From Selaginella moellendorffii (taxonomy: Eukaryota; Plantae; Lycopodiophyta), in assembly GCF_000143415.4 (NCBI RefSeq), contig NW_003314291.1:945702-1009701 (forward strand): a stretch of DNA of 64,000 nt, in the 5' to 3' direction. Below the pieces are notes generated by a model that was not told where the DNA came from, searched no databases, and saw only the letters and a list, made by a program, of their open reading frames with translations. The position numbers and the translations under genes are program-made. Each line of letters begins with the position of its first letter. Position 1 is the first letter of the stretch. This document shows positions 36,101 to 56,133 of this stretch, one piece after another.

Positions 36101-36380
36101 AGGCGCTGATAGATTGGACTCAATCCCCTCCTCAGCGTACTTGAAACAGAGGCTTCAACTCCTGTCTTGATGTACTTGCCATCTGGTGTCCACTGGATAC
36201 CAATCTCATCCGTGTGGCTTTCGGAAGCTCCGCAATCAAGGCTCAGAAATCCTGCAAACAAAATGCTCAGACTTTTAACAAAAGATTCATGTCAACCAAC
36301 TAACTTGGTTGAGCTGAAACATAAATCTGTGTTGCGAAGAATGGAGCCGTAAAAAGAAGGATGAGAGGAGTTGACCACAT
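33104..36380 (-). CDS. Malectin-like-domain LRR-RLK (LRR-I), copy 2, apparently intact
   Basis: Signal exon [10 protein letters not shown]...SAQP; FLSLDCG; YGNYDG; DPYDRMW; WSGDPCLP; LRR exons; [22 protein letters not shown]; [12 protein letters not shown]; [11 protein letters not shown]; DFG; GTPGYLDPE; KSDVYSFG. Confidence 0.85.
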
Positions 36381-37115
36381 TGTTGCTACCCTCTTTTTCA
36401 GATAGCTGAAACTTGCTTAAGACCTGGAAAGACATGATAACAACGACGCTGCAACCAGGGACTTTGTCACGCAAACAAACATGCACGCGCAAAGAGCAAG
36501 TCAATAAGATCCATTTGAAAAGTACCTCTGAAAGTTTCTCGCCAAATCCATAGAACGTTCTGGACTTGGAAAAAATCTCTTGAAACTATTCCAGTTTTAC
36601 ATCGAAGTAACAGTCCATGCTGAGGAATTGGCACTCCCTTCAAAGTGAGAGACAAAAGTCACCATTTTCCACCAAACTTGGGAAGAGAAAATGGAGACTT
36701 CAAGCTGTCACGCGTTAACTTAAACAATGAAAGCGATAAGAGGTAGCATACCCTGAACATTATCGCCATCACCAGCCATCGCGTCCACTCTATTGTGCAT
36801 TTGATGAAACTAGCTGTGTAAGTTTGTAAGCTAACAGAGTATACCAACTTACCTGAGTCATCTCTAACGAAGACGCCCATTGATGATCTTGTGCTCGATG
36901 TCTCTTTGCTCGCAGTGTCCGGCTTTTGCATCTGGAAGCTCTCTTGCACCAGCCACGAACGAAAGCCAGGAGTAAATGCGTAACAAGTCTCGTTTTCAAT
37001 CGGCTTCCCAAACTGCAAAAACTTTGTGTGTCGCTTATGTCCGAGACGAGATCACCAGTCGCAAAGCTTTTCCGAAGCTTTGATCTGCTTTCACAATCAC
37101 CCTGCTGCTTGATTC

Positions 37116-37735
37116 ATGGCCGAGCAAGCTTGTCAAGCGCTAGCCATGACCTGGAAATGCTTGCAAGGCGTCATGGATCGAATCAAGCATCGACTCATCC
37201 TTGTCTGTGCTGGAGGAATGCTGGCCGGCACTGGTAACCATCTTTGTGCTGCTCATCGGTACACCAATCTTCCTGCTCTTCCTTCCACTTCTCGCCCCTC
37301 TCGGCATCCTGGCGGTTCTTTTCATCGGTGGGATCCTTCGTCACCACTAGCTTGGCTCTTCAAAGTCGCAAAGTTTGGAGCCGAAGCCATGATCCATACC
37401 GTGACCGGCAACTTCGTCGAGATCTTCACTGGAAACGTTGGATCCCACGTCGCCAGCATCGTCACAAATGCCGCTGGCGGTGTCAAGAACGTTGCTGTGG
37501 CTGTGAGTGGAAAAACCTCGCATGCTGTGGGCACGGCGATGGCGAAGCATCGGGCGTAGTCGCCAGTGGTCTAGTGGAGACCGCCAAGAACACTGGAAGG
37601 CTCTTGAGATTGGAACCACTGCAATGACTGGGGGAGTTCTCGAGCTTGGATCATGTGTAACTGGCGGAGTTCTCGAGCTTGGATCGAGCGTAACCGGCAC
37701 TGTGACTGAACTTGGATCCAAGCTATAGCTACCAG
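37116..37735 (+). pseudogene. Frameshifted copy of the oleosin-like gene
   Basis: Reverse-complement match to 46020-46738, with deletions and frameshifts through the hydrophobic core. Confidence 0.85.
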
Positions 37736-37854: not shown

Positions 37855-38263
37855 GATCGTGGAGACGATCGGCCATTCCTGCCGGTGCACCGAGATTGGC
37901 TCGCCAAAAATCCCAGAGGTTTTGATCTTCCTTGGTGGATGGGACAAGCCTCGGCGGCCAAGTCGATTCGTCCTGTTCTTCCCGAGAAATGGGAAAGGTC
38001 TATAAGGAGCTATGAGAATCGATTGGTAGGCATCTGTGTGTGCTGGGCGTCCTGGCCGGGAAGCTCTGCTCCCATGGCTTCTCCAGCACCGTCACCGCGC
38101 TCCTGCCTCTTGCGCTTCTCCTAGATCCGGCGCTCGCGCAGCAGCCACGCCTTCTCGCGGCTGCTTGTGCATCTGGAGCCTCTTCCACTGCCACTCGGTG
38201 ACGCCGCCGGGGAATGTGCGCTTGCCGCCGCCCATTCGCGCTCCGCTCAAGCTCATCGCCATG
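37855..38263 (-). pseudogene. Rearranged pseudogene of the RH33/RH48 N-domain gene
   Basis: 38045-38263 is colinear with ~27190-27454 with deletions. 37855-38032 is an inverted copy of ~26838-27040. Confidence 0.85.
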
Positions 38264-38332
38264 GCGGGAAAACCTCAAGAACCCTAAACTCTCGCCATAA
38301 ACCCTAAAATTTGCTCTTGAATTTTGGGGTCG

Positions 38333-40321
38333 ATGGAAGAGGGGCGCATCCGCGAGCTGGAGAACGATGTTGCCGCATTGACTGCGAGGATCAAGGCAAG
38401 TTCTTTCATCCTCTCTTCAGTGAGTGAAAATCTTGGCGCAGGCACTGGAAATGGAGAATGCAAATTTAACTGCTCGATTCTCACAGCAGGTTCGTTCTTC
38501 TTCTGTCCCATTCGATTTACTCTCTGTTCTTTCAGCATGGTGAGAACCAGTCGCTAAAATCGAAGCGGACTCACAAGAATCACAAGAAAGAAAATCAAGG
38601 TACTCTACGATCCGTTTAAAAGGATTCCTAGTAACTCTTTCTCTCTTGCTAGGAAACTTTAAGCGACGATTTGTGGCTTTGAAAATCATGTACATTGGCA
38701 GCTGGTACGTTCCTATCTTTCGTTTGGAAGAAAGCTGATTTTTTTTTTTCTTTTTTCTTTGTTACTATCTAGTTACCATGGATTTGCGTCGCAAGGCTGT
38801 GCTTTTAAAACTGTCGAGGTATGCAGTGTTTTCTTAGAACATGAGAGCAACTCTGGCATTTTCCAGTCCGAGATCTTTGCCGCTCTACAGAGAACAAATC
38901 TTGTAGTCGGTTCTATAGCCGATGCAAATTACTCGAGGTGTGGTCGAACTGATAGAGGTGTTTCGGCGACTGCTCAGGTTCTCTTTGCGGTGTAACTCTT
39001 CCTTTTTCGAGCTTGGCTGCTTGCAGGTTATTGCATTGTATTTGCGCTCGAAAAAGAAAGCGTTGGATGACACCGAAGAGTCTGGTTATGGCTCAAAAGA
39101 TAGAGTCACTGTCGCAAGATCCAGCCGCGAAGAGGAGGAGATGTTTGCCGCCGAAACAGGTACCGTCACTCGAGATTTCGTGATCTAATCGTGTGAATCA
39201 CGCCAGATGACGATGAAATAGACTACGTAAGCTCACTTAATCGGGCTCTTCCAGCAGATATACGAGTTCTTGGATGGTGTCCTGTTCCTCCTGGATTTCA
39301 TGCAAGGTATCACTCTCAAATTTAAGCATTCACTTTGCGAGTGCTCTGCTGCGCAGGTTCAGCTGTTTGTATCGGGAGTACAAGTACTTCTTCATCGACG
39401 ATGGCTTAAACATAGACGTAAGAAATTGAAAATTTGGCTGCAGAAGTTTCATTTTTCTTTTCATTTTGTTTAGGCCATGAAGCAAGCATCTCAGCGACTG
39501 CTTGGTGAGCACGATTTTCGCAACTTCTGTAAAATGGATGCTGACAACATTCACAACTACACCCGACAGATTCTGGCTTTCGACATTCTTCCAATTGAAG
39601 AGTGGTAGAGTATTTGAATCTTTGGATTGTTGGTTTCTTCATCACTGTCTCGCCTTTCAGCTGGGAAGGAAGAAGTCTGTGGGTTATGCACGTCCGAGGA
39701 AACGCATTCTTATGGCATCAAGTTCGTTGCATGGCTGCTGTGCTTTTCATGATTGGCCGTGGCCATGAAACACTGACAGTAAGCTGCAACTCGATTTTTT
39801 CCATGGAGATAAATAAGTTTGTTGATTTTGTAGATCATTGATGACCTTTTAGATGTGGACAAGACAATGAGAAAACCACAGTATGTGATGGCGCCCGAGC
39901 TTCCGCTTGTTCTTCAGAGTTGTGCTTTTCAAGGCCTTCGATTCTACTGCCGGCCTGGTAAGTGTCAAAGTTAGATCCAGGCTCACATTTTGGTTTACAT
40001 ATGTTTGTAGAATCAAAAGCACAGATACATAGGCATTTGTTGAAACATCTCGACCAAACGCTGTTAACAGCTGCACTAATTTCTGAAGGCATGCTGGAGC
40101 TTGATTGTCCTGGTGAGCATGCTTCTCTTCATGCTTTGATTAAATCCATCATGTTGCAGACTCAATTGTTTCTTTTAGCAAAACAAATTATGTGCCTCTC
40201 CTCTCTCGGCCCACTGAACGTAAGCAAACTTCTACCAGAGTTTCACAGCTGACGATTGTGTGTTTTAGCTACTTATGAAGAACGGCGAAAGAAATTGATC
40301 AACACCACCAACACTTCTTAA
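38333..40321 (+). CDS. PUS3: tRNA pseudouridine 38/39 synthase (TruA family, PUS3/DEG1-like), multi-exon
   Basis: RFVALKIMYIG, YHGFASQ, YSRCGRTDRGVSATAQV, LNRALPADIRVLGW, RFSCLYREYKYFF, GEHDFRNFCKMD, GNAFLWHQVRCM, KPQYVMAPELPLVL. Stop TAA at 40319-40321. Confidence 0.9.
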
Positions 40322-40354
40322 ACCACTGTCCCAATTTTGGTAAACTTGCACTGC

Positions 40355-43300
40355 TTATCTTCCTCTGCTGAAAGTATCCATAGGTCGTGTGATAGAGTTC
40401 CCTTCCTCTTCAAGTTGGATGGCCTCTTTCAGCTCGTTTACCACAGCGCTCATGTTTGGCCTCCTATCGGATCGATGCTCCACGCAGTTCATTGCAAGTT
40501 CCAAAACTTTCCATACTGCTTGCTCTTTATAGCTTGATAGCTTGGGATCTATTAGAGTTTTCAGGTTGCCTCTCTCGAGTTCCCTGCATGCCTGGAGGAA
40601 GTAAAGCTGCTGTCAAGCAAGCGAAAGACTTGGAAAGAGTGTTCTTACCCATTTTGAAAGAACAACTTGTTCCTCTGGAAGTGTCAGATTGATAGGTTCA
40701 CGGCTGCAAACAATTTCAAACAGTACCACTCCAAAGCTGTACACATCTGATTTCTCTGTGAGTCTACTGTAGGAATGGTACCTGAGAAACCATTGAAGAA
40801 AAATTTGTGACAATGGTTCAAACCAGAAGATAATGAAATTGAAGTTTCTGCTTACTCTGGATCGAGATATCCTGGAGTTCCTTTGACAATTGTTGAGACG
40901 TGAGATGCATTGTTTTTGTCGTAAAGCTTAGAGAGCCCGAAATCGCTAACTTTGGCAACCATAGCAGAGCTTAAAAGTATGTTGGTTGTCTTTATGTCTC
41001 GATGGATTATATGAAGATTACAAGACGTGTGCAAATACTCCAATCCTATGAAAATCATTGTTTAGAGCCATCATACAAACTCGTCTTGTTTACCTTGAGC
41101 AGCGTCTAAAGCAATTTGCAATCGAGATTTCCAACTTAAAGTTGGACAGCTTGTGCCTTACATACAAGCACATTAAAGAGAGACAAATGGAAACCAAAGA
41201 AGATCACTTACCATACAAGTGCTCTCTCAAAGTTCCATTCGACAAAAACTCATAGAGCAGTATAAGCTTCGATCCATGGTCACAGTAGCCAAGAAAAGAG
41301 ACCAAGTTCCTATGATGTACGACTGATAGAATATCAATCTGCCAAGAAAATGCAATGGTTTTGAATCAGTTTGGTATCCATGCTTCACGATCAAACTCAC
41401 CTCTGTATTAAACTCTTGATATCCTTGCTTTGAGGAGCTTGACAAAACCTTAACAGCAACTTCAACACCATTGGAAAGGCGGCCATAGTACACTGGTCCA
41501 AAGCTTCCTTCGCCTAGAACTTGCTTGAAGTTGTTTGTGGCCTCGATCACATCTTTGTAACTAAAGTTTTTGGTGCTGGAGTTTGGAGACTTTGGAGCCA
41601 GGCCTGGAGATTAGAAATGAGCTGTAAACACAAGCCAGCAGTTTGCAACTTACTTGGACTCTCAGTATCTTTGGTATCTGACTCCTGTGGTCTGATGGTT
41701 CCTGGGCTCTTGTCCGTCTTTCTACGGGACATGAAACACACAACAAGTCCAGCTGCGAGTAGTAACATGGCTACGCATGGAACCGCGATTCCAATTAAAA
41801 GTGTTGTATTTTTCGTCTTCTTTGCGTCGAGTTTCTCGCATAACTTAACACTAGTGCTGCAGAAGGAAGGAAACAAAAGATAAAATTCAAGAGAGAATCT
41901 CGATAAACGAACTTGAAAGAGAGCTGCAGTTCTGGTGGTACACAATCCAAGCTGTTGTTTTGTAAGGACCTGTGAAATAGTGAGTGTAAGAAACACTCTA
42001 ATTTTCGAGCATACGCTGTACTCACAAAACCGTGAGGTTCTTCAAGGAGCTAAAGTTTGGAACTGGCCCTGTCAATGCGTTGTTATCCAGATATCTGAAG
42101 GACAAGATGAGAAGAAACCAAGTGCTAAAGAGCCTTTCATACATTTTTGTTAGATGTAACAGCTTCGTGATGGACTGTGATATATTACCACTCAAACGTT
42201 GGTTGGATAAGTTCCTGCAATGCAAAGCTCTTCAGTTTCGTATGATAGATATGAATCCTCTTACAGCTCTGTGATTCTTGCTGGGATTTGAGCTACGTCG
42301 CAAGTGATCCACTGCCAAGTGTAGGGAAGAGGCAAACAAGGATCTCCCGACCATCCAGTGATGTTAAAGTCATTCATCACATCACGAATCGCTACCACTG
42401 TCCAGAGAAGAAAACTGTCACAAACAAGATAATGTATATGATGCTACATACCATCATTGGGTTCTGTCCCTGGAAGGAGACCACCTTTATACTCGAAGAG
42501 CTCCGCAGCATTGAGGACCGCACCCAGCGTAGAGTTTGGCGTGGGGACCAGAAAGAAACGCGTTGGATTAGAAAGCTCCACGGGAGCTTTGAGATACACT
42601 TGCACTGAAGTAAGCGGAGCCTGGGTGTGCTTTTCGATGTTGACGGTCACCGCGATCTGGGGAGTTTCAAGAGAGCTGGTGTTGAAAAGGAGCGTGAACT
42701 CTCTCGTGTCGTTCCCCAGAGCGAAGAACTCCGCAAAGTAAAAGTTCACGTAGTACTTCGTTGCCTCGAGCGTGGCTGGAAACTCGAAGACCATCACGGA
42801 GTTGGAGACGATCGCGGAGCTCATCACCGCGGTGGGAGGCTTGTTAAAAGTTTTCCCTACGGAAACAGTCGAGTTAGTGTTGATCCGCTGGTAGCTTCCC
42901 ATGTTTTTGAAGCTCTTGTCAGCTCTCCATATTCGATCGTATTCATCCAAAGGATACCTGTTCGAAGAATTGAACGCTCGAAGAGAAAAAAGTTTGGGAG
43001 TTTCTTACCTGATATCTTCGTTTGAAGTTGCTCCAAGATTGATCCTTCTCCACATGAGTAAGACCTCACTATAATCCAAGACACTTCCACTCATCCCAGG
43101 AGCCAGCCTTCTAAGCTCGATTGTGGAGATGAATGGGATATTTGCCGGTGAATTCGAGCTGGTTCCAAGGCATAGATCTAGTGTCGAGTTTGTGGCTTTC
43201 ACCACAAACTCGTAGTACCACGACGACTGGCTTCCCAGGCTCGCATTCATCACAGTATTCGCACCAATCGCGATGTCAAACTCGACTCGAGTTGATTCCA

Positions 43301-43702
43301 GCCCATCGTAGTTTCCGTAGTAGAACCGCGGCCTCACGATGTAGCTCTCGTCCACCACAACTGGCAAAGCGTAGCAGTGCTTCCGGGAGGTGTCATTAAA
43401 GTAGCGAAGACGCTGCACTATTAGATCCGCATCTTTCTTCAACAAGCTTGAAATGGAAGCTGTCTCTCCGGTGGTGATGTACTTGTCGTCGGGTATCCAT
43501 TCGATACCATTTACATCAGTGTGGCTGTCGAAAGCTCCACAGTCGAGGCTCAAAAATCCTGCACAAGATCGATAGAGTTCTTCCAAAAACCATCTTTCAA
43601 ATCGATGAAATGCTACTCACCTGGTTGCGCTGAAACGTAAGTCTGTGCTGCGAGGATAAAGCCAAGCGTGAAAGGGAGAAGGAGATGATCAGCCGACCAC
43701 AT
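40355..43702 (-). CDS. Malectin-like-domain LRR-RLK (LRR-I), copy 3, apparently intact
   Basis: Signal exon [14 protein letters not shown]; FLSLDCG; malectin-like exons; WSGDPCLP; LRRs; TM; complete RD kinase; ends [15 protein letters not shown]-stop. Confidence 0.87.
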
Positions 43703-44424
43703 TTTCCGCTCGAGCGAGCCGGCACTGGGGCCTATTCTCTCAAAAAGTTGTGCTCATGCTCTCGAGAGAAGCAAACGAGAGAGCGATCCAGCCTGTGCAT
43801 AGACGACCAAGCAAAAGAAAGACATAAGAACCAGCAGGATGTTTCACGATCTAAATCAGACAGGCAAGAGAGGAGACTTTGGATATGTCAATGGCAATCC
43901 ATTTGCATCAAAGCACCTTCGAGAATGCCGTAACAAACGCCGTGTTCGTGGCCTGAACGTGGAAGCGTATTAAAATCTATCAAATCAGTGTACGAATCTC
44001 ACCATTTATCTTATGATTTGTGTTATAACGACTTGCAAGCAGAAACTCCTTGTTCTATCTACATGCGCTATGTCAAGCATGAACTTACATCCTTCAATCT
44101 CAAGGTACAAAGAGTGAGAAAATGGAATTTATTTTGAAACTCTTCGGTCTAAACTGGACAAAGAAAGCGAGACAAAGTGATTGAAGAGCTGAAACAGGAG
44201 TACAAACAAGAGTAAGCTGACGTTCATGACATGTTAATTTTGTTGGAGGACTTTGCTTTTCATCAAGGAATCTAACATCTCAAGTCTTGAAACACTCGAG
44301 GTTCAACTTGCACGCAACAATGAATGATTGAAACAAGAGCACAAAGAAAAAGAGGCTACACTTCCAAATTGATGCTGGCCTCGAGCAATTTGAAGGCCAC
44401 ATACATCAAAACTAGAAAAACACT

Positions 44425-45880
44425 CGAAGAAATTGTTCGCCTTGTTCTCCAGCTGCTGGATCTCAGCCTCATCTGGCTCAGTATAACATACGGCCACGAC
44501 TTCTCTGGATACGTGAGCCACTCGCGCCAAACGAGAGCCTCTCTTCACGTCCTTCGCGTTCTTGGGAGCCGGAACACCTCCCGGCCAGCGCCCAGCTTGG
44601 CAACCAGTACCGTGTAAGTTATCTCGTAGGGCACCACGAGGAAGAGCTCGAGCGTCTCACTGATAGCCGTGGGCATCGAGTTCCAGCACGAGAGGTACTT
44701 CCAGCACTCGTCGAAGATCCACCTTGCCACACTTGCCGTAGAGATTGATCTCATGAGAAGCGCGCTCACGATCACTCGGTCCGCTTGGAGGACCCGCTCG
44801 TGGACGGCGGCCGTTGCCATATCCGCGCAAGCGTCGAGGACTCTCGCAAAGGTGATGTGATTCGGCACAACGCCTTCGTGGTCCACGGCCTCCTCGGGGG
44901 AGTGGGAGTAAGCCGAGAGCATCGACGTTCACATCCTTGAACTCCACACGGTCAAAAACTTCTCCCGCGAAATCGAGCCCGCCATACCTCCGGTACGTTG
45001 ATGAGCCCGGTCATCACCACCACGGAGGCAGACTTACGGCTTGCTACTCCCGAAGCAAAGCTGTACGATGATCAAAACAGGCCTCCTACAGCTGCGGAGC
45101 TTCCCAAGTCCTACGCTCAGTCGCACGGCTAGGAAGAGGGCCGTTCTGTTTGGTTTACCGTACCGAGTCGAGCAACTCTTCGCACGAGGTAGATCCAGAC
45201 GTGCGAAGGAAAGATGTAGCGTCGAGAGGTCTTCCAGACGAGACACGGTCTGCTCGTCAGATGCTCAAGGACTACATACTGCCATCCTCCGCCGGACTCC
45301 GACAGCACAAGCGACGATGCAACCAACGACGATCAGTCTATCGATGATGGTGGTGTTCACAGTGACGATGGCAACGATCTCTCAGGAGAAGAGGACGAAG
45401 AAGAAGAACAATAAACTACTGCAAATACTAACCGAGAGTGACGATCGCTACCAAAAAAGCCTTGACTACTACCAAACGGATGCTGCTCGAGGCCCGACGC
45501 TCACATCCTCAACTCCGTGCTGTGCTGCGTGGAAGGCCCGGAAGATCCACGACCAGGTGTTCTCGTCGGCCTTCTACGTGGACGTGGGACTTGATTCGCG
45601 ATAACCTGAATCGGAGTGTCATCTTATCAAGCAACCATGTCCGTCGTTGATAATCAAAGTCTGGAAATGCTTCGTCTTTCCAGGCCCTGCGACTCGCTTC
45701 TCCATATCCATAGACGTGTCAAAGCTCGAGTCGGCTTTTTCCTCCTGTGCAAAATCAATGGATGGCTGGGATTTGTATCGGAGAAAATGCGCTCCGCCTA
45801 CTCGAGCACCACTTGCAATTGTGTCATCGCGATGATGATGGCCTTCCCAAGCACCTGGCTCCCCTTCTTGCCGCAAGTAG
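44425..45880 (-). pseudogene. Scrambled, condensed inverted remnant of the LSG1-PPR block (49717-55270)
   Basis: 44425-45023 is inverted PPR 54041-55270. 45020-45430 is direct LSG1 51257-51640. 45431-45587 is direct PPR 53868-54044. 45584-45880 is inverted LSG1 51260-49717. All pieces carry many small deletions. Confidence 0.88.
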
Positions 45881-45949
45881 TAGAGTATAGCCAGGGATCT
45901 CTATTATCACATTTTCACTAAAAGAAAGATCACATTGACCGGTGGTAGA

Positions 45950-46738
45950 TCACGAGTGCCTCTCCGATCCCGTATTCTTCTTCTTGCGCGACGAGCTCTT
46001 GTCACCGGATGGATGGAACAATCCTGCCAAGCCGCCGAGTACATTGGATCCAAGTTCAGTCACAGTGCCGGTTACGCTCAATCCAAGCCCGATAGCTCGG
46101 CCGGCTACGCTTGATCCAAACTCGAGAACTCCATCGGTTACACTTGATCCAAGCTCGAGAACTCCCCCAGTCACGGCTGTGGTTTCAATCTCGAGAGCCT
46201 TCCCAGTGTTCTCCACTACACAAGTGGCGATTACGCTCGATGTGCCGGTGATCGCCATCGCCGTGCCCGCGACACCACCCACAGCTTGCGAGGTTTTATC
46301 ACTCACTGCCACAGCAACGTTCTTGACACCGCCAGCGGCATTTGTGACGATGCTGGCGACGTGGGATCCAACGTTTCCAGTGAAGATCTCGGCGAAGTTG
46401 CCGGTCACGGTATGGATCATGGCTTCGGCTCCAAACGTTGCGACTTCCAAGAGCCAAGCTAGTGGTGACGAGCTTGCAAGCACGAAGACCAGGATCCCAC
46501 CGATAAAAAGAACCGCCAGGACGCCGAGATTGACGAGAAGTGGAAGGAAGAGCAGGAAGATTGGTGTACCGATGAGCAGCACAAAGATAGTTACCAGTGC
46601 GGCAGTGCCGGCCAGCATTCCTCCAGCACAGACAAAGACGAGTCGATGCAAGGTTGGCTTTTCCTGCTTGATTCGATCCATGACGCCTTGCAAGCATTTC
46701 CAGGTCTTGGCTAGCGCTCCACAAGCTTGCTCGGCCAT
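45950..46738 (-). CDS. Oleosin-like protein with degenerate proline knot and long Gly/Thr/Val-rich 11-mer repeat C-tail (262 aa)
   Basis: ~65-residue uncharged core LVFVCAGGMLAGTAALVTIFVLLIGTPIFLLFLPLLVNLGVLAVLFIGGILVFVLASSSPLAWLL resembles oleosin ...ATPLFxxFSPxLVP...SSLSW. The tail has VTGGVLELGSS-type repeats. Confidence 0.75.
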   Translation of the reverse strand: MAEQACGALAKTWKCLQGVMDRIKQEKPTLHRLVFVCAGGMLAGTAALVTIFVLLIGTPIFLLFLPLLVNLGVLAVLFIGGILVFVLASSSPLAWLLEVATFGAEAMIHTVTGNFAEIFTGNVGSHVASIVTNAAGGVKNVAVAVSDKTSQAVGGVAGTAMAITGTSSVIATCVVENTGKALEIETTAVTGGVLELGSSVTDGVLEFGSSVAGRAIGLGLSVTGTVTELGSNVLGGLAGLFHPSGDKSSSRKKKNTGSERHS

Positions 46739-47229
46739 GAATCACGCAGCAGGGTAATTGTGAGACCAGATCAAAGCTCCGGAAAAGCTTTGCCACTGGT
46801 GATCTCATCTCGGGCATAAGCGACACGCACAGTTTTTGCAGTTGGGAAGCCGATTGAAAACGTGAAATCGGAACCAAGACAGGAGTTGTTGTTACGCATT
46901 TACTCCGTAACGGGTTGCATGGCTTTCGTTTGTGGCTGATGCAAGAGATCTTCCAGATGCAAAAGCCAGCGACTGCGAGCAAAGAGACATCAAGCAAAAG
47001 ATGTCTTTGAGGTGGCTTGTTCCATGTCTTCGTTTCTAAGGTGACTCAGGTAACTTGGTTTAGTCCATGACCTCTTGTTGGCTTGAACTTACATTTAGTT
47101 TGATCAAATGTCCAGGACAAGTTTTGGGCGTGGACAAGCTGGCTGATAATGGCGTTCAGGTATTCAGGTCAAGGATTCACTTGGACGATCATTTTTTAAG
47201 TTTGTTCAGTTACAAAGACTTACTGTACA

Positions 47230-47520
47230 AGTGGTGACCTTTGTTTGTCACTTCGAAGAGCCGATTCGGTCAGATAGTTTCACGAGATTTTTATTGCGTC
47301 CAGAAAGTGATTTATTTGGCGAGAAACCTTCAAAGGTACTCATTGACTTCTTTGCCGCGTGTCTGGTTGCAGTTTCGGTTTTATCTGAAGACCTGAAGTC
47401 TTTCAGGACTTATACAGATTTATGTTTCAGCTCAACCAGGTTAGTTGACATAAATCTCCGGTCAAAGGTCTCAAGCAGGATTTTGGAGCCTTTGGTATCC
47501 AATGGACGATAAGTACATTA
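47230..47520 (+). pseudogene. Inverted remnant of the 5' end/promoter of LRR-RLK copy 2
   Basis: ACAGATTTATGTTTCAGCTCAACCAGGTTAGTTGACA (~47414-47450) matches the reverse complement of ~36290-36330. Flanks match 36170-36590 with deletions. Confidence 0.75.
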
Positions 47521-47744
47521 TGACAACCTCCATAAGGTTTTTCAATCAGGTATAAGTCTCTTTTTTGACGTTACCAGTGCATGGAACTTGGATAGGAACA
47601 AGCTTAATTTCGCCGAGACATGGGACTCCAAGAAATGGAAATATATATCTAAGAGCTTACAACAATCTTTCAAGAAGTCTAGTTTTTTTCCAAGTTTCAG
47701 AAAGCTTGCTTTCCCAAGGCTTGTAAAAGTCGAGTGTGTCCTCT

Positions 47745-49585
47745 CTACATCCAGCTCTCGAGCTTCTCTCTGTGCAGCTCCTCGAAGGAGAAATCCTCGG
47801 CGACGGGCGGAAACAGGCCATCCCTGCTGGGTCTCGATTTGGTCTCCCAGCCGAGAATCCCTGTGAATGCCTCATGAACATCGTAAAGCACGGACTGACG
47901 GGTTGTTGGAACTTCCCTGCAATGCCCAATATACTTCTTGTAAGCACACCATATAGGTGTGTCTGGAGGCTTTGCAATGTCATAGTCTTCCGGCCGCATG
48001 TGAATAAGCTTGCACTTCCGCTCCCTGAGTTCCACAAGACAAAAAACAGTCGAGATCATCTGCAGATTTGGAATCCGATCACGTACCACAAACTGTCATG
48101 AGTGTAGCATCTCAAGGTCTGTTCGATCAGAGATGGGATTCGCTCCTTTGAGAAGCCACCACCCAACACCTGCGTGATGCAGACACGAAGATGATGTAAG
48201 CGCACACTCACAGTAAAGCATGAAGAATTCACTACCTCCTCCTCCTCCTGCTCTGCAACATCGTGCGTACCGAGCCGGCCATCTAAACAAGCTCTCAGAG
48301 TTTGAGAAAGATAAAAAAGGAGGCAACAACTTACACGTCAAGTCGTGGTCGTAATAGATTCGGAGGTCATAGCGTCCAAGCCAGATGCGAGCGTGCTGCA
48401 TACAGGTCCCAATGGCGTGGTGGTGCGGCAGCACAGACAGGGGTGGCCTCTCTGCAACAAGCGATCTCAGAAGTTTGCTGTTCTCGATACCTTGGAGCAG
48501 CAGGACAAGTTCCTTGACCAGCAGGGGCATAGAGGGCATTTCATCGGGAAACCTACGCTGCAGAGGTGGCTTGAGCGGATGTCGAGCAAGCTGCGCATAA
48601 GCCCGTCGAACTCCGTCGTGTGCATGCGGAGTCGACAGCATGTTCCACCCCTGTTGTTGCAAGTCAAAAGAATGAGAACCGGGAAAGTTGCAAACCAGTG
48701 TTGTTACCAGCCTGTCCACCGGGAGTGTGAGAAAGAAGTCGGCCTTGAGAATCTTGGAAACCAAGCCAAAGAGCTTTGGGACAGCTGCAACGCCATAACG
48801 GGAGGGCTTTTGTGTGTTCCCTGACTGTGTTTTACTCGTCACCTTTTCGCGCCCTGCAAGTAGAGCCGGTGAGACAGAAAACCAGAGCAAACAGATGATT
48901 TCTTACATCTGAATTCCCCATTGGAAGGCATCCGATAAGGGGGTGGAGCAGAGAAATTCATACCGATAGTGTTGCGTGCCGGTATCTCGGAACTCACTGC
49001 CATTCCAACAAAGAAGAAATGAAAAGCGAAAAGAACATGAGTTTTGTATGACAAGCACAAACCTTGGATGTTTCTGCTTTCGCAAAACTTTGCCCAAAGT
49101 AGCTCCAAGTGCTCGCTCACCTCCTCATCTTGCTTAGCTGCATCCAGCGACAAAAGCCTCTGGATTCCAGCTGACGAGAGCAGCTCCTGGCGGGCGAAAT
49201 CAACCATGCAATCCAGCTGCGCTGCGCCACCCTCCCATCCCAGCGTCGCAGCGCACGCACTCCTCTCGGCACTAGAGGCGCAGAGGCGAGCAATGTAGCA
49301 AACTGCAAGCACCAGGAACAGCGTCTCGTCCACCTCGGCGGAGTCCCAGCTTTGCAGCATGTATTCCATGCACCGGGCTTCATGCACGTCCAGCGCCGCG
49401 GCCTCCTCCTGGTTGGGGCGGGCAGACTTTGCGACAAACTCGGACACCGTGAGGAGCTTTGCAGCGCTCTCTCTGCATCGTGTGAGAGCTTGATGCAAGT
49501 CTCCTTGTTCGTGGTGGTGACCTAGCTGGGTGGCAAGCGATGATAGATTCCTACGAAGAACTCGACTGCCCAACCTGGAAAGCAT
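47745..49585 (-). CDS. Hypothetical multi-exon protein with a mitochondrial-presequence-like N-terminus
   Basis: MLSRLGSRVLRRNLSSLA start, long open exons (48839-49585, 48096-48890, 47745-48089) separated by short intron-like segments, head-to-head with LSG1. No family recognised; exon joins not resolved. Confidence 0.5.
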
Positions 49586-49726
49586 CTCGTGACCTAACAC
49601 AAAGGGCTCCCAACAAGATGTGATCTTCCTTTCAATGAAAATCTTGCAGAGACCCCGCCAAAATATTTTGCTTTGAGTGGTAAAACCCTAGCTAGAACTA
49701 TAGCAGAGATTAGGGTTCTTGCGGCA

Positions 49727-51874
49727 ATGGGGGGGAAGAAGGGGAGCCAGGTGCTTGGCAAGGCGCTGATCAAGCGGCGGAACGCGGACAAGCAGCAGCA
49801 TCATCATCGCGATGACAAGGCTGGAGCGTCGGCACTGCAATCCGTGATGGAATTCACGGATTTGCAAGTGGTGCTCGAGCAGGCGGAAGAGGCCGAGCGC
49901 ATTTTCTCCGATGCAAATCCGCCGCCCCAGCTTGTGTCAAGGTGAGTGCCATACATTTGTTTTTTCCTTTCTAAGCTCCAAGTAACTTGTGGCTCTCGCT
50001 CGAATTTCCCAGAGAAGAGAGCTCCAGCGCGAGCTACGATGAGGATAAGCGGAGAGAGGAGCTCGAGAACGAGTCCAGTCTCACTGTTCCTCGCAGGTTT
50101 GTACGCAGGATTTTTCCCTAGATTTTGGAAGATTGATTTTTCTCGCCTTGTGTAGGCCGAAATGGCACAAGAAGATGACCGTGGAGGAGCTTGACACCCA
50201 GGAAAGGCAAGCGTTTCTAGAATGGCGTCGGAACCTCGCACGGTATGCTCACTGCATCACAAAAACGTTTTTTTTTCTCTTAAAGATGATGGTGATCTAG
50301 GCTGGAGGAGAACGAGAAGCTTGTTATCACTCCGTTTGAGAAAAATCTCGAGGTGTGGAGACAATTATGGCGTGTGATCGAACGATGCGACCTGGTAAGT
50401 TGTGATGATATGGTTAAGCTTCAAGCATAAATCTCGGTCCTTTTGTAGGTCGTAATGGTGGTGGATGCTAGAAACCCACTATTTTATCGTTGTCCAGACC
50501 TGGAGGTAACTTGGAATGCAAGAAAAACTTCGAGTGCTTCTTTGCAAGGAAAACTTATGTTCGTGATTTACAGGCCTACGTCAAGGAGATTGATGAAAAC
50601 AAGACAACGCTGTTGCTCTTGAATAAATCTGATCTACTGCCCGTCGCAATAAGGTCTGCATTCAATTCTGTTTCAGAACAAACTCTTAGGCTTGCTTCTT
50701 TTCTTCCAGAAAAAAATGGGCAAGCTACTTTGACGAGCTGGGACTGGATTATATCTTCTGGTCTGCGAAAACCGCTACAGCAAAACTTGAAGGCAAGGAC
50801 GATGACCAGGACCTCGATGAAGCAGACGATGGTGATGTTCCGGTTCTAGGCAGGGAAGAACTTCTAGCCTCATTACAAGTTCGAGCCGAGGGTATCCGCC
50901 AGAGACGAAGCGCGGGACAGGAGGAAAAAGCCGACTCGAGCTTTGACACGTCTTCGTCGGTGATGGATACGGAGAAGCGAGTTGCAGTCGGGTTTGTGGG
51001 GTATCCAAACGTTGGAAAGAGCTCTACGATCAACGTTTTGGTAGGAGAGAAGCGCACAGGTGTGACTTCAACGCCTGGAAAGACGAAGCATTTCCAAACT
51101 TTGATTATCAACGACAAGCTGATGCTCTGTGACTGTCCGGGATTGGTTTTTCCTTCGTTTACGAGCTCCAAGGCTGACATGGTTGCTGCTGGCGTCCTAC
51201 CAGTTGATAAGATGACAGACTACAGGGGTCCGATTCAGGTTATCGCGAATCAAATCCCACGGAGGCAGCTGGAAGAGACTTACGGCTTGCTACTGCCGAA
51301 GCCAAAGCCGTACGAGGATCAAAACAGGCCGCCTACCGCTGCCGAGCTTCTCAAGTCCTACGCTCAGTCGCGCGGCTATGTAGCTTCGAGAGGTCTTCCA
51401 GACGAGACACGATCTGCTCGGCAGATGCTCAAGGACTACCTCAATGGTAAGCTTTTATACTGCCATACTCCGCCGGACGACGACACCACAAGCGACGATG
51501 AAAGCAACGACGATGATGAAGAAGCTGTTGATGAGGGTGGTGTTCACAGTGACGATGTTGACGATCTCTCAGGAGAAGAGGACGAAGAATACGAAGAAAG
51601 AGAAGAGGAAGAGGAAGAAGGATCGAAAACAACTACAGGTACTGGTGAATCCAATCTCAAAGCTCGACTGGATGGAATTTTCAGGGACGTCGACTTGAAC
51701 GCTAGCAAGAGCCAGGGAGCCAAGGCTGTGAAGCCGAAGAAGGCCCTTCACAAGATGCAGAAGAAAGCTCCCAGGAAGAAAGACCGCTCGTGGAGAGTGA
51801 AAGACGACGAGAGCGACGGCATGGCTCGCGTGAAAGGGATATCAGTCTCCGTGAGCTATGGAGCAGCTCGCTAG
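49727..51874 (+). CDS. LSG1: Large subunit GTPase 1 (60S ribosome biogenesis, circularly permuted GTPase)
   Basis: TPFEKNLEVWRQLWRVIERCDLVVMVVDARNPLFYRCPDLE, LLNKSDLLP, VGYPNVGKSSTIN, TPGKTKHFQT, DCPGLVFPSF, GLPDETRSARQMLKDYLNGKL. Confidence 0.95.
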
Positions 51875-52029
51875 CTTGCTACATCCAGTCGCAGCAAGTC
51901 CATCAAGATGGTGCTGGCCAGATACGAAGCAAAGGATCCAAAGTTTCGCTTCGCTGTGTCTCGCGCCATGGAATGAAACACAAGCTTTGTGTAGCCTTCG
52001 TGAGATCTTGGAGAGAGCTGGATGTAGAG

Positions 52030-53415
52030 CTACACAGCATCCTCGTCCGTGGCCGAGAGTCCCAGCAAGTTCATCAAGTGAAAACTCCGTCCATGGTGCT
52101 GGCCGAAGATCGAAGCAAAGGATCCAAAGTTTTGTTCGGGCATTCTCTCCAGAAGCTTTTCGGCCTCCTCGAGCTCCCCGTTCGTGACAAACGTTCCAAG
52201 CAAGGCGTTCCAGGCAACAACAGTGCGTTCTTCCATGGTGTCAAACAGCCTCTTAGCGTGCTGCGTCTGGCCGTTTCGTCCAAACGCGGCCACCATAGCC
52301 GTGCTCGAGATGGTGTTAAACTCCGGCATGGAATCAAACAGAATCTTTGCGGCTTCAATGTACCCCTTGCCGCTGTAAGCTTGCAGCATGAGAGTATATG
52401 CCGCTAAGTTCCTCTGTGGCATGGAATCAAATAGTTCTTTTACTCCGTACATATGCCCATTCCGGGCATATGCTCCTAAAAGTACGTTCCACGACACCAC
52501 GTCCGTTTGAGGCATCAAATCGAATGTCCGTTTTGCCCCGTACATGTGACCGGACATGGAATATGCCGTCAGCATGGTGCTCCAGGACACAACGGTACGC
52601 TCGCACATTCCGTCAAACACGATCTTCGCCTCTTCCAGATGCCCACTTTGGGCATATGCTGCCAGCATGGCATTCCACGTGAGCACGTTATGCTCCACGG
52701 CGCTTTCAAAGCAACGACGTGCATCGTCTGCGTGACCGCGCTCCCCAAAAGCGCTTACCATTGTCGTCCACGTCACCACGTTCCACGAGGGCATCCTGGT
52801 GAATAGAGTTTTAAGGTCTTCCAGATACCCGATTTGGGAATATCCTGACAAGAGGGCATTCCAAGATACTATGTCTCTATTAGGCATATAATCGAAAATT
52901 TGCTTGGCTTGGCATATACGAAGCTCTTGAGAGTAGGATGTGAGGAGTGTGTTCCAGGAAAAGAGATCTGGGTCGGGAATTAGGTCAAAAATCTCTTGCG
53001 CGTCTTGCAAATGCCCGCGCGTGGCATAGGCGCGGAGCATTGTCGTCCAGGAGACCTTGTCCTTGCAGGGATTGCGATCGAAGACCTCCTTGGCACCGGC
53101 GAGATCGTCGTTGCGCGCGTGGGCGCCCAGCAAAATATTCCACGAGAAATCGTTTGGATCCGGCATGGCATCGAAGACGCCGCGTGCGTCGTGGAGCGCG
53201 CCGCAGCTGCCATACATCTGGATGAGGAGATTGGCCAGGAATTTGTCCCCGGCGTGATCGCTCTCCAGGATCCGAGCGTGGAGTGATCTCCCCTGCGCTA
53301 GACTCCTGCAAGATCTCACCGCCGCAATCAGGAGCTCGCGGCTCTCGATCCAGCAGGGATCGCCACCATCGCGCCGATTGGCGATCTTGAGAGGCTGGCA
53401 AGTGCTCGCGCTCAT
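52030..53415 (-). CDS. PLS/SS-rich PPR protein lacking E/DYW (possibly 3'-truncated)
   Basis: About 11 tandem 31-aa motifs (e.g. DIVSWNALLSGYSQIGYLEDLKTLFTRMPSW), ending in non-PPR sequence. Confidence 0.8.
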   Translation of the reverse strand: MSASTCQPLKIANRRDGGDPCWIESRELLIAAVRSCRSLAQGRSLHARILESDHAGDKFLANLLIQMYGSCGALHDARGVFDAMPDPNDFSWNILLGAHARNDDLAGAKEVFDRNPCKDKVSWTTMLRAYATRGHLQDAQEIFDLIPDPDLFSWNTLLTSYSQELRICQAKQIFDYMPNRDIVSWNALLSGYSQIGYLEDLKTLFTRMPSWNVVTWTTMVSAFGERGHADDARRCFESAVEHNVLTWNAMLAAYAQSGHLEEAKIVFDGMCERTVVSWSTMLTAYSMSGHMYGAKRTFDLMPQTDVVSWNVLLGAYARNGHMYGVKELFDSMPQRNLAAYTLMLQAYSGKGYIEAAKILFDSMPEFNTISSTAMVAAFGRNGQTQHAKRLFDTMEERTVVAWNALLGTFVTNGELEEAEKLLERMPEQNFGSFASIFGQHHGRSFHLMNLLGLSATDEDAV

Positions 53416-53527
53416 CTCTCTCGCTGAATTTCTCTCACATTTTCTTGGAATTTTTCTAGGGTTCTAAGGCCTGGGGGTTTAGGGTTTTACGCGAGGAGGA
53501 AGAAGGGACGCCCTCTCGCGCCGCCCA

Positions 53528-55306
53528 ATGTGGAACGCGATCCTACGTCTCCACTCCCGGACCAGACCGAGAAGAAGCTCGCACCTCGCCAGGTACATTT
53601 CCTACACACCGATCCTCCGCAAGGAAGAGAACCTCCAGCAGGCCTATGCGGATCTCATCCGCTACTTCACCTTCACGCGCGATCTCGAGTACGCGCGCAA
53701 GCTTCACGGCAAGATCGTCGACCGGGGGCTGGGAAAGGATCGCTACTTGCTCAATCTCATCACCGAGATGTATGGCAAATGCGGGAGCTTCGACGAGGCA
53801 AAGCAGGTGTTTGACAGGATGGCGATCCGGGACCAGATGTCCTGGGCAGCGATGATCACTGCCGGGGCCGAGAGTGATGATCGCTACGAAGAAGGCCTCG
53901 ACTACTACCGCCGGATGCTGCTCGAGGGTGGCATGCTTCCCGACGCTCACATCCTCAGCTCCGTGCTGTGCTGCGTGGAGACGCTCCCGGAGGCCCGGAA
54001 GATCCACGACCAGGTGGTTTCCTCCGGCTTGTACGTGGACGTGGTGGTGATGACCGGGCTCATCAACGCATACCGGCGGTGTGGCAGGCTCGATCTCGCG
54101 GGAGAAGTTTTCGACCGGGTGGAGTTTAAGGATATGGTGCTGTGGACGTCGATGCTCTCAGCTTACTCCCACTCCACCGACGAGGCCGTGGAGGGCTTGA
54201 GGATCTTCTGGAAGATGGAGCTCGAGGGGATCCGGCCGGACAAAGTTACGTTCACGAGTCTCATCACTGCCACCGGGAATGCGCTGTGCGGATGCTACGC
54301 CAAGCTCGTCGACGACAGGGTCCGCGCTCACGGGCTCGAGAAGGACGTGACGATAGCCTCCGCGATGCTCTACATGCACGGGAAGAGTGGCAACTTGGAG
54401 GAAGCGAGGAAAGTTTTCGAGTCCATGGCGGAGAAGAACCTCGTAACTTGGAACTCGATGATCGCCGCGTGCTCCTTCTACGGACAAAGCCGCGACGCTC
54501 TCCAGCTCTTTCGGACGATGGACCATGAAGGCGTGGTGCCGGATCACATCACCTTTGCGAGCGTCCTCGACGCTTGCGCGGATATGGCAACGGCCTCGGC
54601 CGGGAGGGCCGTCCACGATCGCGTCCTCGCGGCCGGACTCCAGGCGGACCATGTGATCGTGAGCGCGCTTCTCAATCTCTACGGGAAGTGTGGTAAGGTG
54701 GGCGATGCGAGGAAGATCTTCGACGAGTGCTGGAAGAACCTCTCGTGCTGGAACTCGATGCTGACGGCGTATGCCCAGAACGGGCATATCAGGGAGACGC
54801 TGGCGCTCTTCCTGGATATGTGCCATCAAGGGGTGGTGCCGGACGAGATAACTTTCACGGTGCTGGTCGGCGGTTGTGGGCATGCTGGGAAGGTGGACGC
54901 TGGCAGGGACGTGTTCCGGCTGTTCCAGGACGACTACCAGGTTGAGGCATTGGTGGATCACTATGGTTGCATGGTAGACGTGCTGGGACGCAATGGGAAG
55001 CTACAGGAAGCCGAGGAGCTCATCGAGAGCATGCCGTTCTATCCGGATCTCGTGGCCTGGACGGCAGTTCTTCGGGCTTGCAAGAACGCGAAGGACGTGA
55101 AGAGGGGGTCCCGCTTGGCGCGAGCGGCTCTAGAGACGTATCCAGAGAAGTCGGGGCCGTATGTTATGCTGAGCCAGATCGAGGCTGAGATCCAGGAGCT
55201 GGAGAAAAAAGTGGCCGAGAAGAATGGCTGTGAAGAGGAGAAGAAGGCGAACAGTTTCTTCGATTGTTTGCAACCGGCAGTTCTGTGTGCTTGCGCTAAT
55301 CGTTAG
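53528..55306 (+). CDS. PLS-class PPR protein with E-type C-terminus
   Basis: Presequence-like N-terminus; MYGKCGS, PDHITFASVLDAC, HYGCMVDVLGRNGKL, PFYPDLVAWTAVLRAC, SGPYVMLS. Confidence 0.9.
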   Translation: MWNAILRLHSRTRPRRSSHLARYISYTPILRKEENLQQAYADLIRYFTFTRDLEYARKLHGKIVDRGLGKDRYLLNLITEMYGKCGSFDEAKQVFDRMAIRDQMSWAAMITAGAESDDRYEEGLDYYRRMLLEGGMLPDAHILSSVLCCVETLPEARKIHDQVVSSGLYVDVVVMTGLINAYRRCGRLDLAGEVFDRVEFKDMVLWTSMLSAYSHSTDEAVEGLRIFWKMELEGIRPDKVTFTSLITATGNALCGCYAKLVDDRVRAHGLEKDVTIASAMLYMHGKSGNLEEARKVFESMAEKNLVTWNSMIAACSFYGQSRDALQLFRTMDHEGVVPDHITFASVLDACADMATASAGRAVHDRVLAAGLQADHVIVSALLNLYGKCGKVGDARKIFDECWKNLSCWNSMLTAYAQNGHIRETLALFLDMCHQGVVPDEITFTVLVGGCGHAGKVDAGRDVFRLFQDDYQVEALVDHYGCMVDVLGRNGKLQEAEELIESMPFYPDLVAWTAVLRACKNAKDVKRGSRLARAALETYPEKSGPYVMLSQIEAEIQELEKKVAEKNGCEEEKKANSFFDCLQPAVLCACANR

Positions 55307-56133
55307 CCGTGGAAGAGCTTGGAGATTTGGAAGGAGATCCAGAGTCCCCATATGGATCTTCCTTGTGATGGACTTTGCCAAGCTCTTGGTACGTACGTAC
55401 AACTTTTCCACAGATCGTGTAGCTTTTTCTCACTGTTTTTTCTTCTTCTAAAAGTCTTTTGAGCGGTACAAGCTTCATGTCTTTTTAAGCTTTCTAGGCA
55501 TAAAAAGGACTCTCAAACAATGAAAGAGCTTAACATTGTGACTGTGAAATATGTAACAAACGAAGACAATGAAGCAAAGTAGCCAGAAGACAGGAAACTT
55601 CCTTTTACTTCATTCTCAATACACTCGGGCAATGGCCTCATAGATTCTTGCATCTAATGCATCTTGAATCTCCACGGGGATATACGCCAATCGTGTCCGA
55701 AAAGCAAATTGATAGACTTGTGATAACGTTGCCAGACACCTAGAACAAACAAAAAATGAGAGAGTGTAGAAAGAATGAATCATAACTTCTCCACATTGGC
55801 AAACATATGCTGGTTCGAGGCAATGTGAATATTTTCAGGAAGAGTATGGTGTTGACTATGGTTTACCCTTGAGCCACCAAGATCACAATGACGTGTGCGA
55901 TCCATGACAATGACTTTGGGCTCCTGCTCATGTCATGCTCACCAATCGTCACCTGGGAAGTTGATTGAGATAGCAAAGCTATTGGGCGCTAGGGGCGTGC
56001 TGCGAATTGTCTATGCCTCGCTGAAACCCACATCAAGCTTGCTCGAAGGTTGGAGGGATGCTGCCAGCAACAATGAGGCATGGTGACTAGCTATTAGCCT
56101 TAAAATAACAATTAATATTTAAAATTAAGCCTT

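What the first reader, a model, noticed from the sequence alone, without database searches (positions are those of the whole stretch)
45950..46738. Oleosin-like hairpin fused to a perilipin/apolipoprotein-style 11-mer amphipathic repeat tail
Seen: an intact intronless 262-aa ORF with an oleosin-like uncharged core in which the proline knot PX5SPX3P reads P-IFLLF-LP-LLV-N. About 150 aa rich in G/T/V/A/S follow, ending in five 11-mers (AVTGGVLELGS, SVTDGVLEFGS, SVAGRAIGLGL, SVTGTVTELGS, NVLGGLAGLFH) and a basic tip (SSRKKK). Known: oleosins anchor in lipid droplets by the hairpin and usually have short tails. 11-mer amphipathic helices are how perilipins, apolipoproteins and synuclein coat lipid surfaces. 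Inference: this protein may combine both droplet-binding modes, for example as a spore or desiccation lipid-droplet coat. Its duplicate at 37116-37735 decayed while this copy stayed open, suggesting selection.
Basis: partly seen in the sequence, partly recalled or inferred. Interest (0 to 1): 0.75.

Follow-up and report, generated by a model that had tools for sequence, protein, structure and literature searches.

The report
Spikemoss oleosin with overgrown amphipathic tail
This spikemoss gene is a fast-drifting offshoot of the plant's ordinary oil-droplet coat proteins (oleosins). Its tail has grown by repeat duplication into a long, weakly two-faced helix pattern like that of animal perilipin 4, but no transcript was seen and its residues evolve as if unconstrained, so it may be narrowly used or dying.

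Summary
An intact intronless 262-codon ORF lies on the minus strand at 45950-46738 of a Selaginella moellendorffii window. It has a 65-residue uncharged core, a weakened proline knot (P-x5-L-P-x3-N), a tail that is 66% G/T/V/A/S, five C-terminal 11-mers and a basic tip.

The core is truly oleosin-derived. Its only real relative among 1.84 billion representatives is a canonical Selaginella oleosin (E 4.9e-7; pairwise E 2e-17). The Pfam Oleosin score stays under the cut-off.

The tail's hydrophobicity has one sharp period of 3.67 residues (11/3), z 10-12 against shuffles, over about 140 residues. It has no sequence relatives. Part of it still aligns with the canonical oleosin C-terminus, so it looks like an overgrown oleosin tail, not a perilipin or apolipoprotein module.

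The selection argument is weak:
- Between the two haplotypes dN/dS is 0.99, against 0.11 for a neighbouring gene.
- Each allele carries a radical hairpin change.
- No RNA read covered the gene in three RNA-seq runs.
- In its favour, all three indels are in frame, while the inverted duplicate is a frameshifted pseudogene in both haplotypes.

Verdict: a new variant of a known kind; function and even activity unproven. The scan had not noted it before.

The parts
45950..46738 (-). Whole coding sequence of the divergent oleosin (262 aa plus stop), intronless
   Evidence: ORF list. Identical to database protein P0001. The allele on the other haplotype is P0002 = EFJ13069.1 / SELMODRAFT_424788, named 'Oleosin' by UniRef.
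46643..46738 (-). N-terminal amphipathic segment, residues 1-32
   Evidence: Hydrophobicity peak at 102 degrees, alpha-band p 0.007-0.015 against shuffles. Residues 3-32 align with the N-terminal domain of canonical oleosin P0003. AF2 helix 3-25 at low confidence.
46448..46642 (-). Uncharged hairpin core, residues 33-97 (arms of 26 and 27 residues around the knot)
   Evidence: No D/E/K/R over 65 residues. Matches Pfam Oleosin positions 18-81 at 17 bits when the tail is cut off. 35% identity to P0003, E 2e-17. A home-made HMM of six canonical oleosins gives 40.9 bits, against 9.0 for the best of 500 shuffles. AF2 helices 30-63 and 68-89 with the break at the knot, pLDDT 64-72.
46529..46564 (-). 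Weakened proline knot, residues 59-70: P-x5-L-P-x3-N
   Evidence: Read from the sequence. The other allele and the dead copy have P at the last position, so N70 is a derived CC>AA change in this allele.
46004..46441 (-). Tail with 11/3 hydrophobic periodicity, residues 100-245
   Evidence: Single spectral peak at 98 degrees (3.67 residues), z 10.4-11.7, reached by 0 of 2000 shuffles in the alpha band. In the 11-column layout, columns 2, 6 and 9 are hydrophobic. Mean hydrophobic moment 0.225. No family, PDB or Atlas match.
46013..46177 (-). Five tandem 11-mers, residues 188-242, from a 33-bp repeat
   Evidence: TRF array 46067-46165, period 33. About 40% identity at lags 11, 22 and 33, z 4.1-5.6.
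45950..46003 (-). Polar basic tip, residues 246-262 (contains SSRKKK), and the stop codon
   Evidence: Read from the sequence. Identical in both alleles apart from one synonymous change.
46739..47002 (-). Upstream region that was duplicated together with the gene
   Evidence: Inverted-repeat arms 46665-46846 and 46920-47002 match 37008-37189 and 36886-36968 at 90-92%.
36886..37735 (+). Inverted duplicate: a pseudogene of the same gene (CDS-homologous part from 37116)
   Evidence: Deletions of 18, 8, 19, 12, 10 and 1 nt, and the 3' end is lost. The 19, 12, 10 and 1-nt deletions are shared by the other haplotype, which adds a 16-nt and a 10-nt deletion of its own. The hairpin fragment 37201-37350 still scores 18.6 bits on Pfam Oleosin.

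Best explanation
The gene is a lineage-specific offshoot of the spikemoss's own oleosins.

Shown:
- The N-terminal helix and the 65-residue uncharged hairpin descend from a canonical Selaginella oleosin.
- The knot keeps two of its three prolines in this allele, and three in the other allele.
- The C-terminal domain is about 145 residues long and keeps one hydrophobic period of 11/3 residues throughout.
- Its last 55 residues are five 11-mers made by 33-bp tandem duplication.
- The stretch around residues 165-216 still aligns with the C-terminal amphipathic domain of the canonical oleosin.

Inferred:
- The tail is an overgrown oleosin C-terminus. It converged on the look of perilipin 4: rich in T, G, V and A, few aromatic residues, low hydrophobic moment.
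- If the protein is made, the hairpin would sit in the oil and monolayer of a lipid droplet. The tail would fold on contact into a long, weak 3-11 helix lying flat on the surface, so that one molecule covers several times the area of an ordinary oleosin.

Also shown: residues evolve without detectable constraint between the two haplotypes, only the reading frame is kept, and no RNA was found.

The gene is therefore either narrowly expressed and fast-evolving, as Brassicaceae T-oleosins are, or at an early stage of being lost.
For: Homology:
- The exhaustive HMMER search found one real relative, P0003 (SELMODRAFT_84903). P0003 scores 123 bits on Pfam Oleosin. The match has E 4.9e-7 library-wide, over query residues 13-99.
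- BLASTP pair E 2e-17.
- An HMM of six canonical oleosins gives 40.9 bits, against at most 9.0 for 500 shuffles.
- The three copies hit Pfam Oleosin at 17, 23.7 and 18.6 bits; the two hairpin domains align to the same profile positions (18-81) and the pseudogene fragment to positions 27-60 within them.

Tail:
- Peak at 98 degrees with z 10-12. It is also the top peak in the non-repetitive half, residues 105-185 (z 3.4-4.5), and in phase with the repeats.
- The other allele keeps the peak despite its indels.
- The P0003 C-terminus against the P0002 tail gives Smith-Waterman z 5.9, reached by 0 of 2000 shuffles. Against the P0001 tail it gives z 3.7, p 0.004.
- Composition and moment are close to the published PLIN4 values (PMC5889406).

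Frame kept:
- All three indels between the alleles are multiples of three (24, 3 and 9 nt).
- The dead copy gained deletions of 16 and 10 nt over the same period.
Against: - dN/dS between haplotypes is 0.99 (22 non-synonymous, 8 synonymous). The neighbouring PPR gene gives 0.11 on the same haplotype pair, Fisher p 0.0007.
- Derived radical changes lie in the hairpin: P70N in this allele, G80D in the other; S89R also differs between the alleles but could not be polarised.
- No read at 97% identity or more fell on the CDS in three raw RNA-seq runs, about 1.4 Gb read from each. Those same runs gave 16-24x depth from a related gene just beside it.
- Fourteen further runs of the same species (kind only guessed as RNA) held next to none of its words.
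- Pfam Oleosin stays below the 25-bit cut-off.
- AlphaFold gave no confident tail structure: pLDDT about 30, called coil beyond residue 134.
- The tail is 17% glycine and net negative. In PLIN4, net negative charge weakened droplet binding.
- Localisation and folding are untested.
Confidence: 0.5

Rival explanations
1. A relic on its way to loss. A once-functional divergent oleosin is now unexpressed and drifting neutrally, and its frame is still open only because too little time has passed.
For: - dN/dS is 0.99 here, against 0.11 for the neighbouring gene.
- CDS divergence of about 3.8% is as high as in the flanks, which are 96-97% identical.
- A knot proline is lost in one allele and an aspartate has entered the hairpin in the other.
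- No RNA reads.
- The sister copy is already a pseudogene.
Against: - All three indels in the live copy are in frame, and both alleles have no stop. Both post-split indels in the dead copy break the frame.
- Tail substitutions at hydrophobic columns are mostly conservative (A/V, V/A, F/L), and the 11/3 peak survives in both alleles.
- Oleosin expression could be confined to spores, which may not have been sampled.
Confidence: 0.3
2. A counterpart of T-oleosins. It would be a sporangial tapetum or spore-coat protein whose hairpin only delivers it to lipid bodies, and whose fast-evolving repetitive tail is the working, perhaps cleaved, product.
For: - Same layout as T-oleosins: an oleosin hairpin plus a long repetitive C-terminus.
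- Same mode of change: repeat expansion, in-frame indels and a high rate of amino-acid change (PMC5217362).
Against: - No expression data at all.
- The T-oleosin lineage is confined to Brassicaceae, and its tails are K/G- or P/A-rich, not 11/3 amphipathic (PMC5217362).
- No cleavage site is known here.
Confidence: 0.1
3. An ordinary two- or three-span membrane protein with a floppy glycine-rich tail, no longer connected with lipid droplets.
For: - The hairpin arms of 26-27 residues are long enough to cross a bilayer.
- Residues 152-175 form a 24-residue uncharged stretch with a Kyte-Doolittle mean near 1.5.
- The strict knot is broken.
- AlphaFold shows no structure in the tail.
Against: - Clear descent from oleosins, with the knot at the centre of the hydrophobic span.
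- The tail's periodicity is helical-amphipathic, not that of a membrane span.
Confidence: 0.1

Closest known systems
Canonical oleosins of Selaginella moellendorffii (e.g. SELMODRAFT_84903 = P0003; Pfam PF01277)
   Same: Homologous N-terminal domain and hairpin, 35% identity over 108 residues. The knot-centred motif IGTPIFLLF-x-P-x-LV is shared. Part of the C-terminal domain still aligns.
   Different: The hairpin is 65 residues, not about 72. The knot serine is replaced by leucine and, in this allele, the last proline by asparagine. The C-terminal domain is about 165 residues rather than about 55. The Pfam score is below the cut-off.
T-oleosins / oleopollenins of Brassicaceae (e.g. Arabidopsis GRP17)
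   Same: An oleosin hairpin followed by a long, repetitive, rapidly evolving C-terminus (PMC5217362).
   Different: A different plant lineage, so an independent origin. Their repeats are Lys/Gly-, Gly- or Pro/Ala-rich, not 11-residue amphipathic units. Their expression and pollen-coat role are established; here nothing is known.
Perilipin 4 giant amphipathic helix (also the 11-mer regions of other perilipins, alpha-synuclein and apolipoproteins)
   Same: 11/3 periodicity over more than 130 residues, enrichment in T, G and V, few aromatic residues and a low hydrophobic moment: 0.225 here against 0.257 for PLIN4 (PMC5889406).
   Different: No sequence homology and no PAT domain or four-helix bundle. 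Fewer charged residues (0.10 against 0.15), net negative rather than positive, and more hydrophobic (0.44 against 0.35). It is tethered by a hairpin, whereas PLIN4 is a soluble protein that binds reversibly.

Membership tests
Oleosin (PF01277) | Significant sequence similarity to family members | tested here: met
   E 4.9e-7 library-wide and 2e-17 pairwise to a canonical oleosin. An HMM of six canonical oleosins gives 40.9 bits, against at most 9.0 for shuffles.
Oleosin (PF01277) | Score at or above Pfam's gathering cut-off (25 bits) | tested here: not met
   8.5 bits for the whole protein and 17 bits for residues 1-115. The other allele reaches 23.7 bits.
Oleosin (PF01277) | Long uncharged central hairpin of about 72 residues | tested here: met
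   65 residues without D/E/K/R, in arms of 26 and 27 residues. This is 7 to 10 residues shorter than in P0003.
Oleosin (PF01277) | Proline knot P-x5-S-P-x3-P at the centre of the hairpin | tested here: not met
   The first two prolines are at the right spacing, but serine is replaced by leucine and the last proline by asparagine. The other allele and the pseudogene keep the third proline.
Oleosin (PF01277) | Amphipathic N- and C-terminal flanks | tested here: met
   The N-terminus peaks at 102 degrees and the tail at 98 degrees.
Oleosin (PF01277) | Sits on lipid droplets | not testable with these tools
   Needs localisation or oil-body proteomics.
Perilipin (PF03036) | Sequence homology: PAT domain, 11-mer region, four-helix bundle | tested here: not met
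   No Pfam hit on the tail even at E 10. Nothing in the exhaustive search, PDB or Atlas.
Perilipin (PF03036) | 11-mer (3-11 helix) amphipathic periodicity | tested here: met
   Peak at 3.67 residues, z 10-12. This shows likeness of design, not membership.
Apolipoprotein A1/A4/E, synuclein, LEA_4 | Sequence homology to the family profile | tested here: not met
   No Pfam match on residues 105-262 at E up to 10.
T-oleosin lineage | Member of the Brassicaceae tapetal oleosin clade, expressed in tapetum | not tested
   The nearest relatives are Selaginella oleosins, which points to an independent origin. No tree with T-oleosins was built, and the expression tissue is unknown.

The most novel reading that the evidence does not exclude
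A lycophyte has independently built a perilipin-4-like long weak amphipathic helix by expanding the C-terminal helix of an oleosin. This would give one protein both the permanent hairpin anchor and a large surface-coating helix. It would work on the oil bodies of spores or other dry-surviving cells, and would evolve fast because only its pattern, not its residues, matters.
Probability: 0.2. Interest if true: 0.6.

Novelty: new variant of a known kind. Interest (0 to 1): 0.35.

Why it matters
If the protein is made and sits on droplets, it would be a natural experiment joining the two main ways proteins bind lipid droplets: a hairpin anchor and a long 11/3 amphipathic helix. It would also show that a perilipin-4-like coat can arise by simple repeat growth of an oleosin tail. 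That is of interest for droplet-targeting rules and for engineered oil-body coats. If it is a relic, it is an ordinary case of a young duplicate pair in which one copy is dead and the other is drifting.

Tried and rejected
- **Pfam on the whole protein:** only E 2.2 for Oleosin, because the tail dilutes the score. Cutting the domain out raised it, but never to the cut-off.
- **Word-index protein search:** found only the protein itself and its allele.
- **ESM Atlas:** oleosin clusters at 0.82, a lead only. The tail alone gave no usable hit, and the structure rows were all weak and bacterial.
- **PDB sequence search with the tail:** chance-level hits only.
- **AlphaFold2 with a 9-row alignment:** mean pLDDT 45, no verdict on the tail. 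I ran no fold search because the model is too poor.
- **Second hit of the exhaustive search (P0004):** a repetitive protein matching only query residues 12-42, taken as spurious.
- **Sequence repeats in residues 100-187:** not significant (lag 11, z 1.6). The idea that the whole tail is a decayed 11-mer array is therefore unproven.
- **Antisense ORF 45942-46757:** open in both alleles, but dN/dS is 0.93 and an open antisense frame arises in 13-25% of codon resamples, so I rejected it as a gene.
- **Literature:** no paper names SELMODRAFT_424788 or EFJ13069. It is not in the held text of the supplementary oleosin table of PMC4126676, nor in the held supplements of the expression-atlas preprint.
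- **Bacterial promoter and terminator scan:** run once; it is irrelevant for a plant gene.

Full report
**What is there**

The window is Selaginella moellendorffii. The protein of the ORF is identical to a database protein (P0001). It is 88% identical to SELMODRAFT_424788 (P0002, EFJ13069.1), which UniRef labels 'Oleosin'.

The ORF lies on the minus strand at 45950-46738: 262 codons, ATG start, no intron needed.
- a 65-residue stretch without charged residues, 33-97;
- the motif P-IFLLF-LP-LLV-N at residues 59-70;
- a tail that is 66% G, T, V, A and S;
- five 11-mers at residues 188-242, encoded by a 33-bp tandem array;
- the basic tip.

**Is the core an oleosin?**

Yes by descent, though it fails two formal tests.
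- The whole protein scores only 8.5 bits (E 2.2) on Pfam Oleosin.
- With the tail removed, this allele scores 17 bits, the other allele 23.7 bits and the hairpin fragment of the dead copy 18.6 bits. The two hairpin domains align to the same profile positions (18-81) and the fragment to positions 27-60 within them. All three are under the 25-bit cut-off.
- The exhaustive HMMER search of 1.84 billion representatives returned one real relative, P0003 (SELMODRAFT_84903), at E 4.9e-7 over query residues 13-99. P0003 is a textbook oleosin, 123 bits on Pfam.
- The pairwise BLASTP E-value is 2e-17, covering the N-terminal domain and the whole hairpin.
- An HMM that I built from six canonical oleosins, without this protein, scores residues 1-115 at 40.9 bits. 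The best of 500 composition-matched shuffles reaches 9.0 bits, so the match is not merely hydrophobic composition.
- The two best single matches are both Selaginella oleosins, which points to an origin within this lineage.
- The strict knot P-x5-S-P-x3-P is not met: serine is replaced by leucine and, in this allele only, the last proline by asparagine.

**The tail**

- The Fourier spectrum of hydrophobicity over residues 105-245 has one sharp peak at 98 degrees, or 3.67 residues (11/3). It has z 10.4-11.7 on two scales, and no shuffle reached it in the alpha band.
- The five repeats contribute much of this signal. Even so, the non-repetitive half (105-185) has its own top peak at the same angle (z 3.4-4.5) and is in phase with the repeats.
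- In an 11-column layout, columns 2, 6 and 9 are V/A/L/I/F, while columns 1, 4, 5 and 11 are S/N/G/T/D/K.
- The mean 3-11 hydrophobic moment is 0.225. The hydrophobic fraction is 0.44, aromatic 0.034 and charged 0.096, with net charge -6.
- The published values for the perilipin 4 helix are 0.257, 0.35, 0.002 and 0.15, with T, G and V enriched and a net positive charge (PMC5889406).
- The likeness to perilipin 4 is therefore real as a design. It is not homology: the tail hits nothing in Pfam at E 10, in the exhaustive search, in PDB sequences or in the Atlas.
- The C-terminal domain of canonical oleosin P0003 aligns with residues 173-228 of the other allele's tail (Smith-Waterman z 5.9, 0 of 2000 shuffles). 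It aligns with this allele's tail at z 3.7. The shared motif has the form E-x-G-S-x-V-T-G.
- I infer that the tail is the oleosin's own amphipathic C-terminus, lengthened by an insertion and by 33-bp repeat growth.
- AlphaFold2 gave hairpin helices 30-63 and 68-89 with the break at the knot (pLDDT 64-72). The tail had a helix at 92-134 and then coil at pLDDT about 30. That is no verdict either way.

**Is it under selection, and is it used?**

- Locus L001 (GL377635.1) is collinear with window 38041-55816 at 96-97% identity. P0002 is therefore the allele on the other haplotype, or a very recent segmental twin.
- Between the two, the CDS has 22 non-synonymous and 8 synonymous differences, giving dN/dS 0.99.
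- The intronless PPR gene 7 kb away, compared on the same haplotype pair, has 8 and 21, giving dN/dS 0.11. Fisher p is 0.0007.
- With the dead copy as outgroup, this allele has gained P70N by a CC>AA change. The other allele has gained G80D inside the hairpin.
- In the other direction, the three indels between the alleles are 24, 3 and 9 nt, so all are in frame.
- The inverted duplicate shares frameshifting deletions of 19, 10 and 1 nt, plus a 12-nt one, in both haplotypes. It was therefore dead before the haplotypes split. It has since gained deletions of 16 and 10 nt.
- Tail substitutions at the hydrophobic columns are mostly conservative, and the other allele keeps the 97.5-degree peak.
- The frame and the pattern thus look protected, but the residues do not.
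- In three raw RNA-seq runs, about 1.4 Gb read from each, no read matched the CDS at 97% or more. Reads next to it, at 45619-45969, were partial matches with loose ends and fixed differences. They come from the true GTPase gene, whose exon fragments are copied there. This shows that the libraries do represent this plant.
- Fourteen further runs of the species (kind only guessed as RNA) held next to none of the stretch's words.
- The tissues are unknown to me, so spore-limited expression is not excluded.

**Comparison with what is known**

- Long, repetitive, fast-evolving C-termini on an oleosin hairpin are known from Brassicaceae T-oleosins, at 28-1000 residues (PMC5217362).
- What I could not find described is an oleosin tail built as an 11/3 amphipathic array.
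- No paper in the library names either accession. EFJ13069 is absent from the held text of the supplementary oleosin table of PMC4126676, which lists Selaginella oleosins starting at OLE1.

**Verdict**

This is a real, already predicted but unstudied gene. It is a divergent oleosin whose C-terminus has grown into a perilipin-4-like periodic tail, which makes it a new variant of a known kind. Its activity is doubtful. I put about 0.5 on a live droplet-coating protein of narrow expression, 0.3 on a relic, and the rest on a T-oleosin-like or non-droplet role.

Noticed in passing
window 45030-45900: Scattered fragments of exons of the neighbouring GTPase gene (MMR_HSR1 family; L001 5014-7159) and of the PPR gene lie just downstream of the oleosin-like gene. 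RNA reads land here only in part, with loose ends at 45643, 45685, 45712 and 45748 and fixed differences, so they come from the true gene elsewhere.
   Followed up: partly
window 45942-46757 (+) and L001 9982-10833 (-): The strand opposite the gene is also open over its whole length in both alleles (271 and 283 codons, GTG start, P/S/T-rich). dN/dS is 0.93, and 13-25% of codon resamples give such an open frame, so it is a shadow of the biased codon content.
   Followed up: yes
window about 28500-31900, 33100-36400, 38000-44400 and 61700-64000: Several malectin-like receptor kinase paralogues, 70-85% identical to one another at DNA level, form a local cluster around the oleosin-like pair. The two inverted oleosin copies bracket one kinase and a pseudouridine synthase gene.
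   Followed up: no
window 44566-47089 versus L001 9649-12314: The block holding the gene is only 89.7% identical between the haplotypes by BLAST, against 96-97% in the flanks. Within the CDS, substitutions amount to about 3.8%, so at least there the extra divergence is indels.
   Followed up: partly
P0007 (LOC112350473, elsewhere in the genome): A second Selaginella oleosin is annotated as a 269-aa protein that also carries two further Pfam domains (PF24626, PF22938) which I did not look up. This may be a merged gene model.
   Followed up: no
same genome, another piece (note s1-408457): An earlier first-stage note mentions a multi-copy family of glycine-zipper / amphipathic-repeat membrane proteins. 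No sequence was shown, and my searches found no relative of this tail, so a link is unknown.
   Followed up: no
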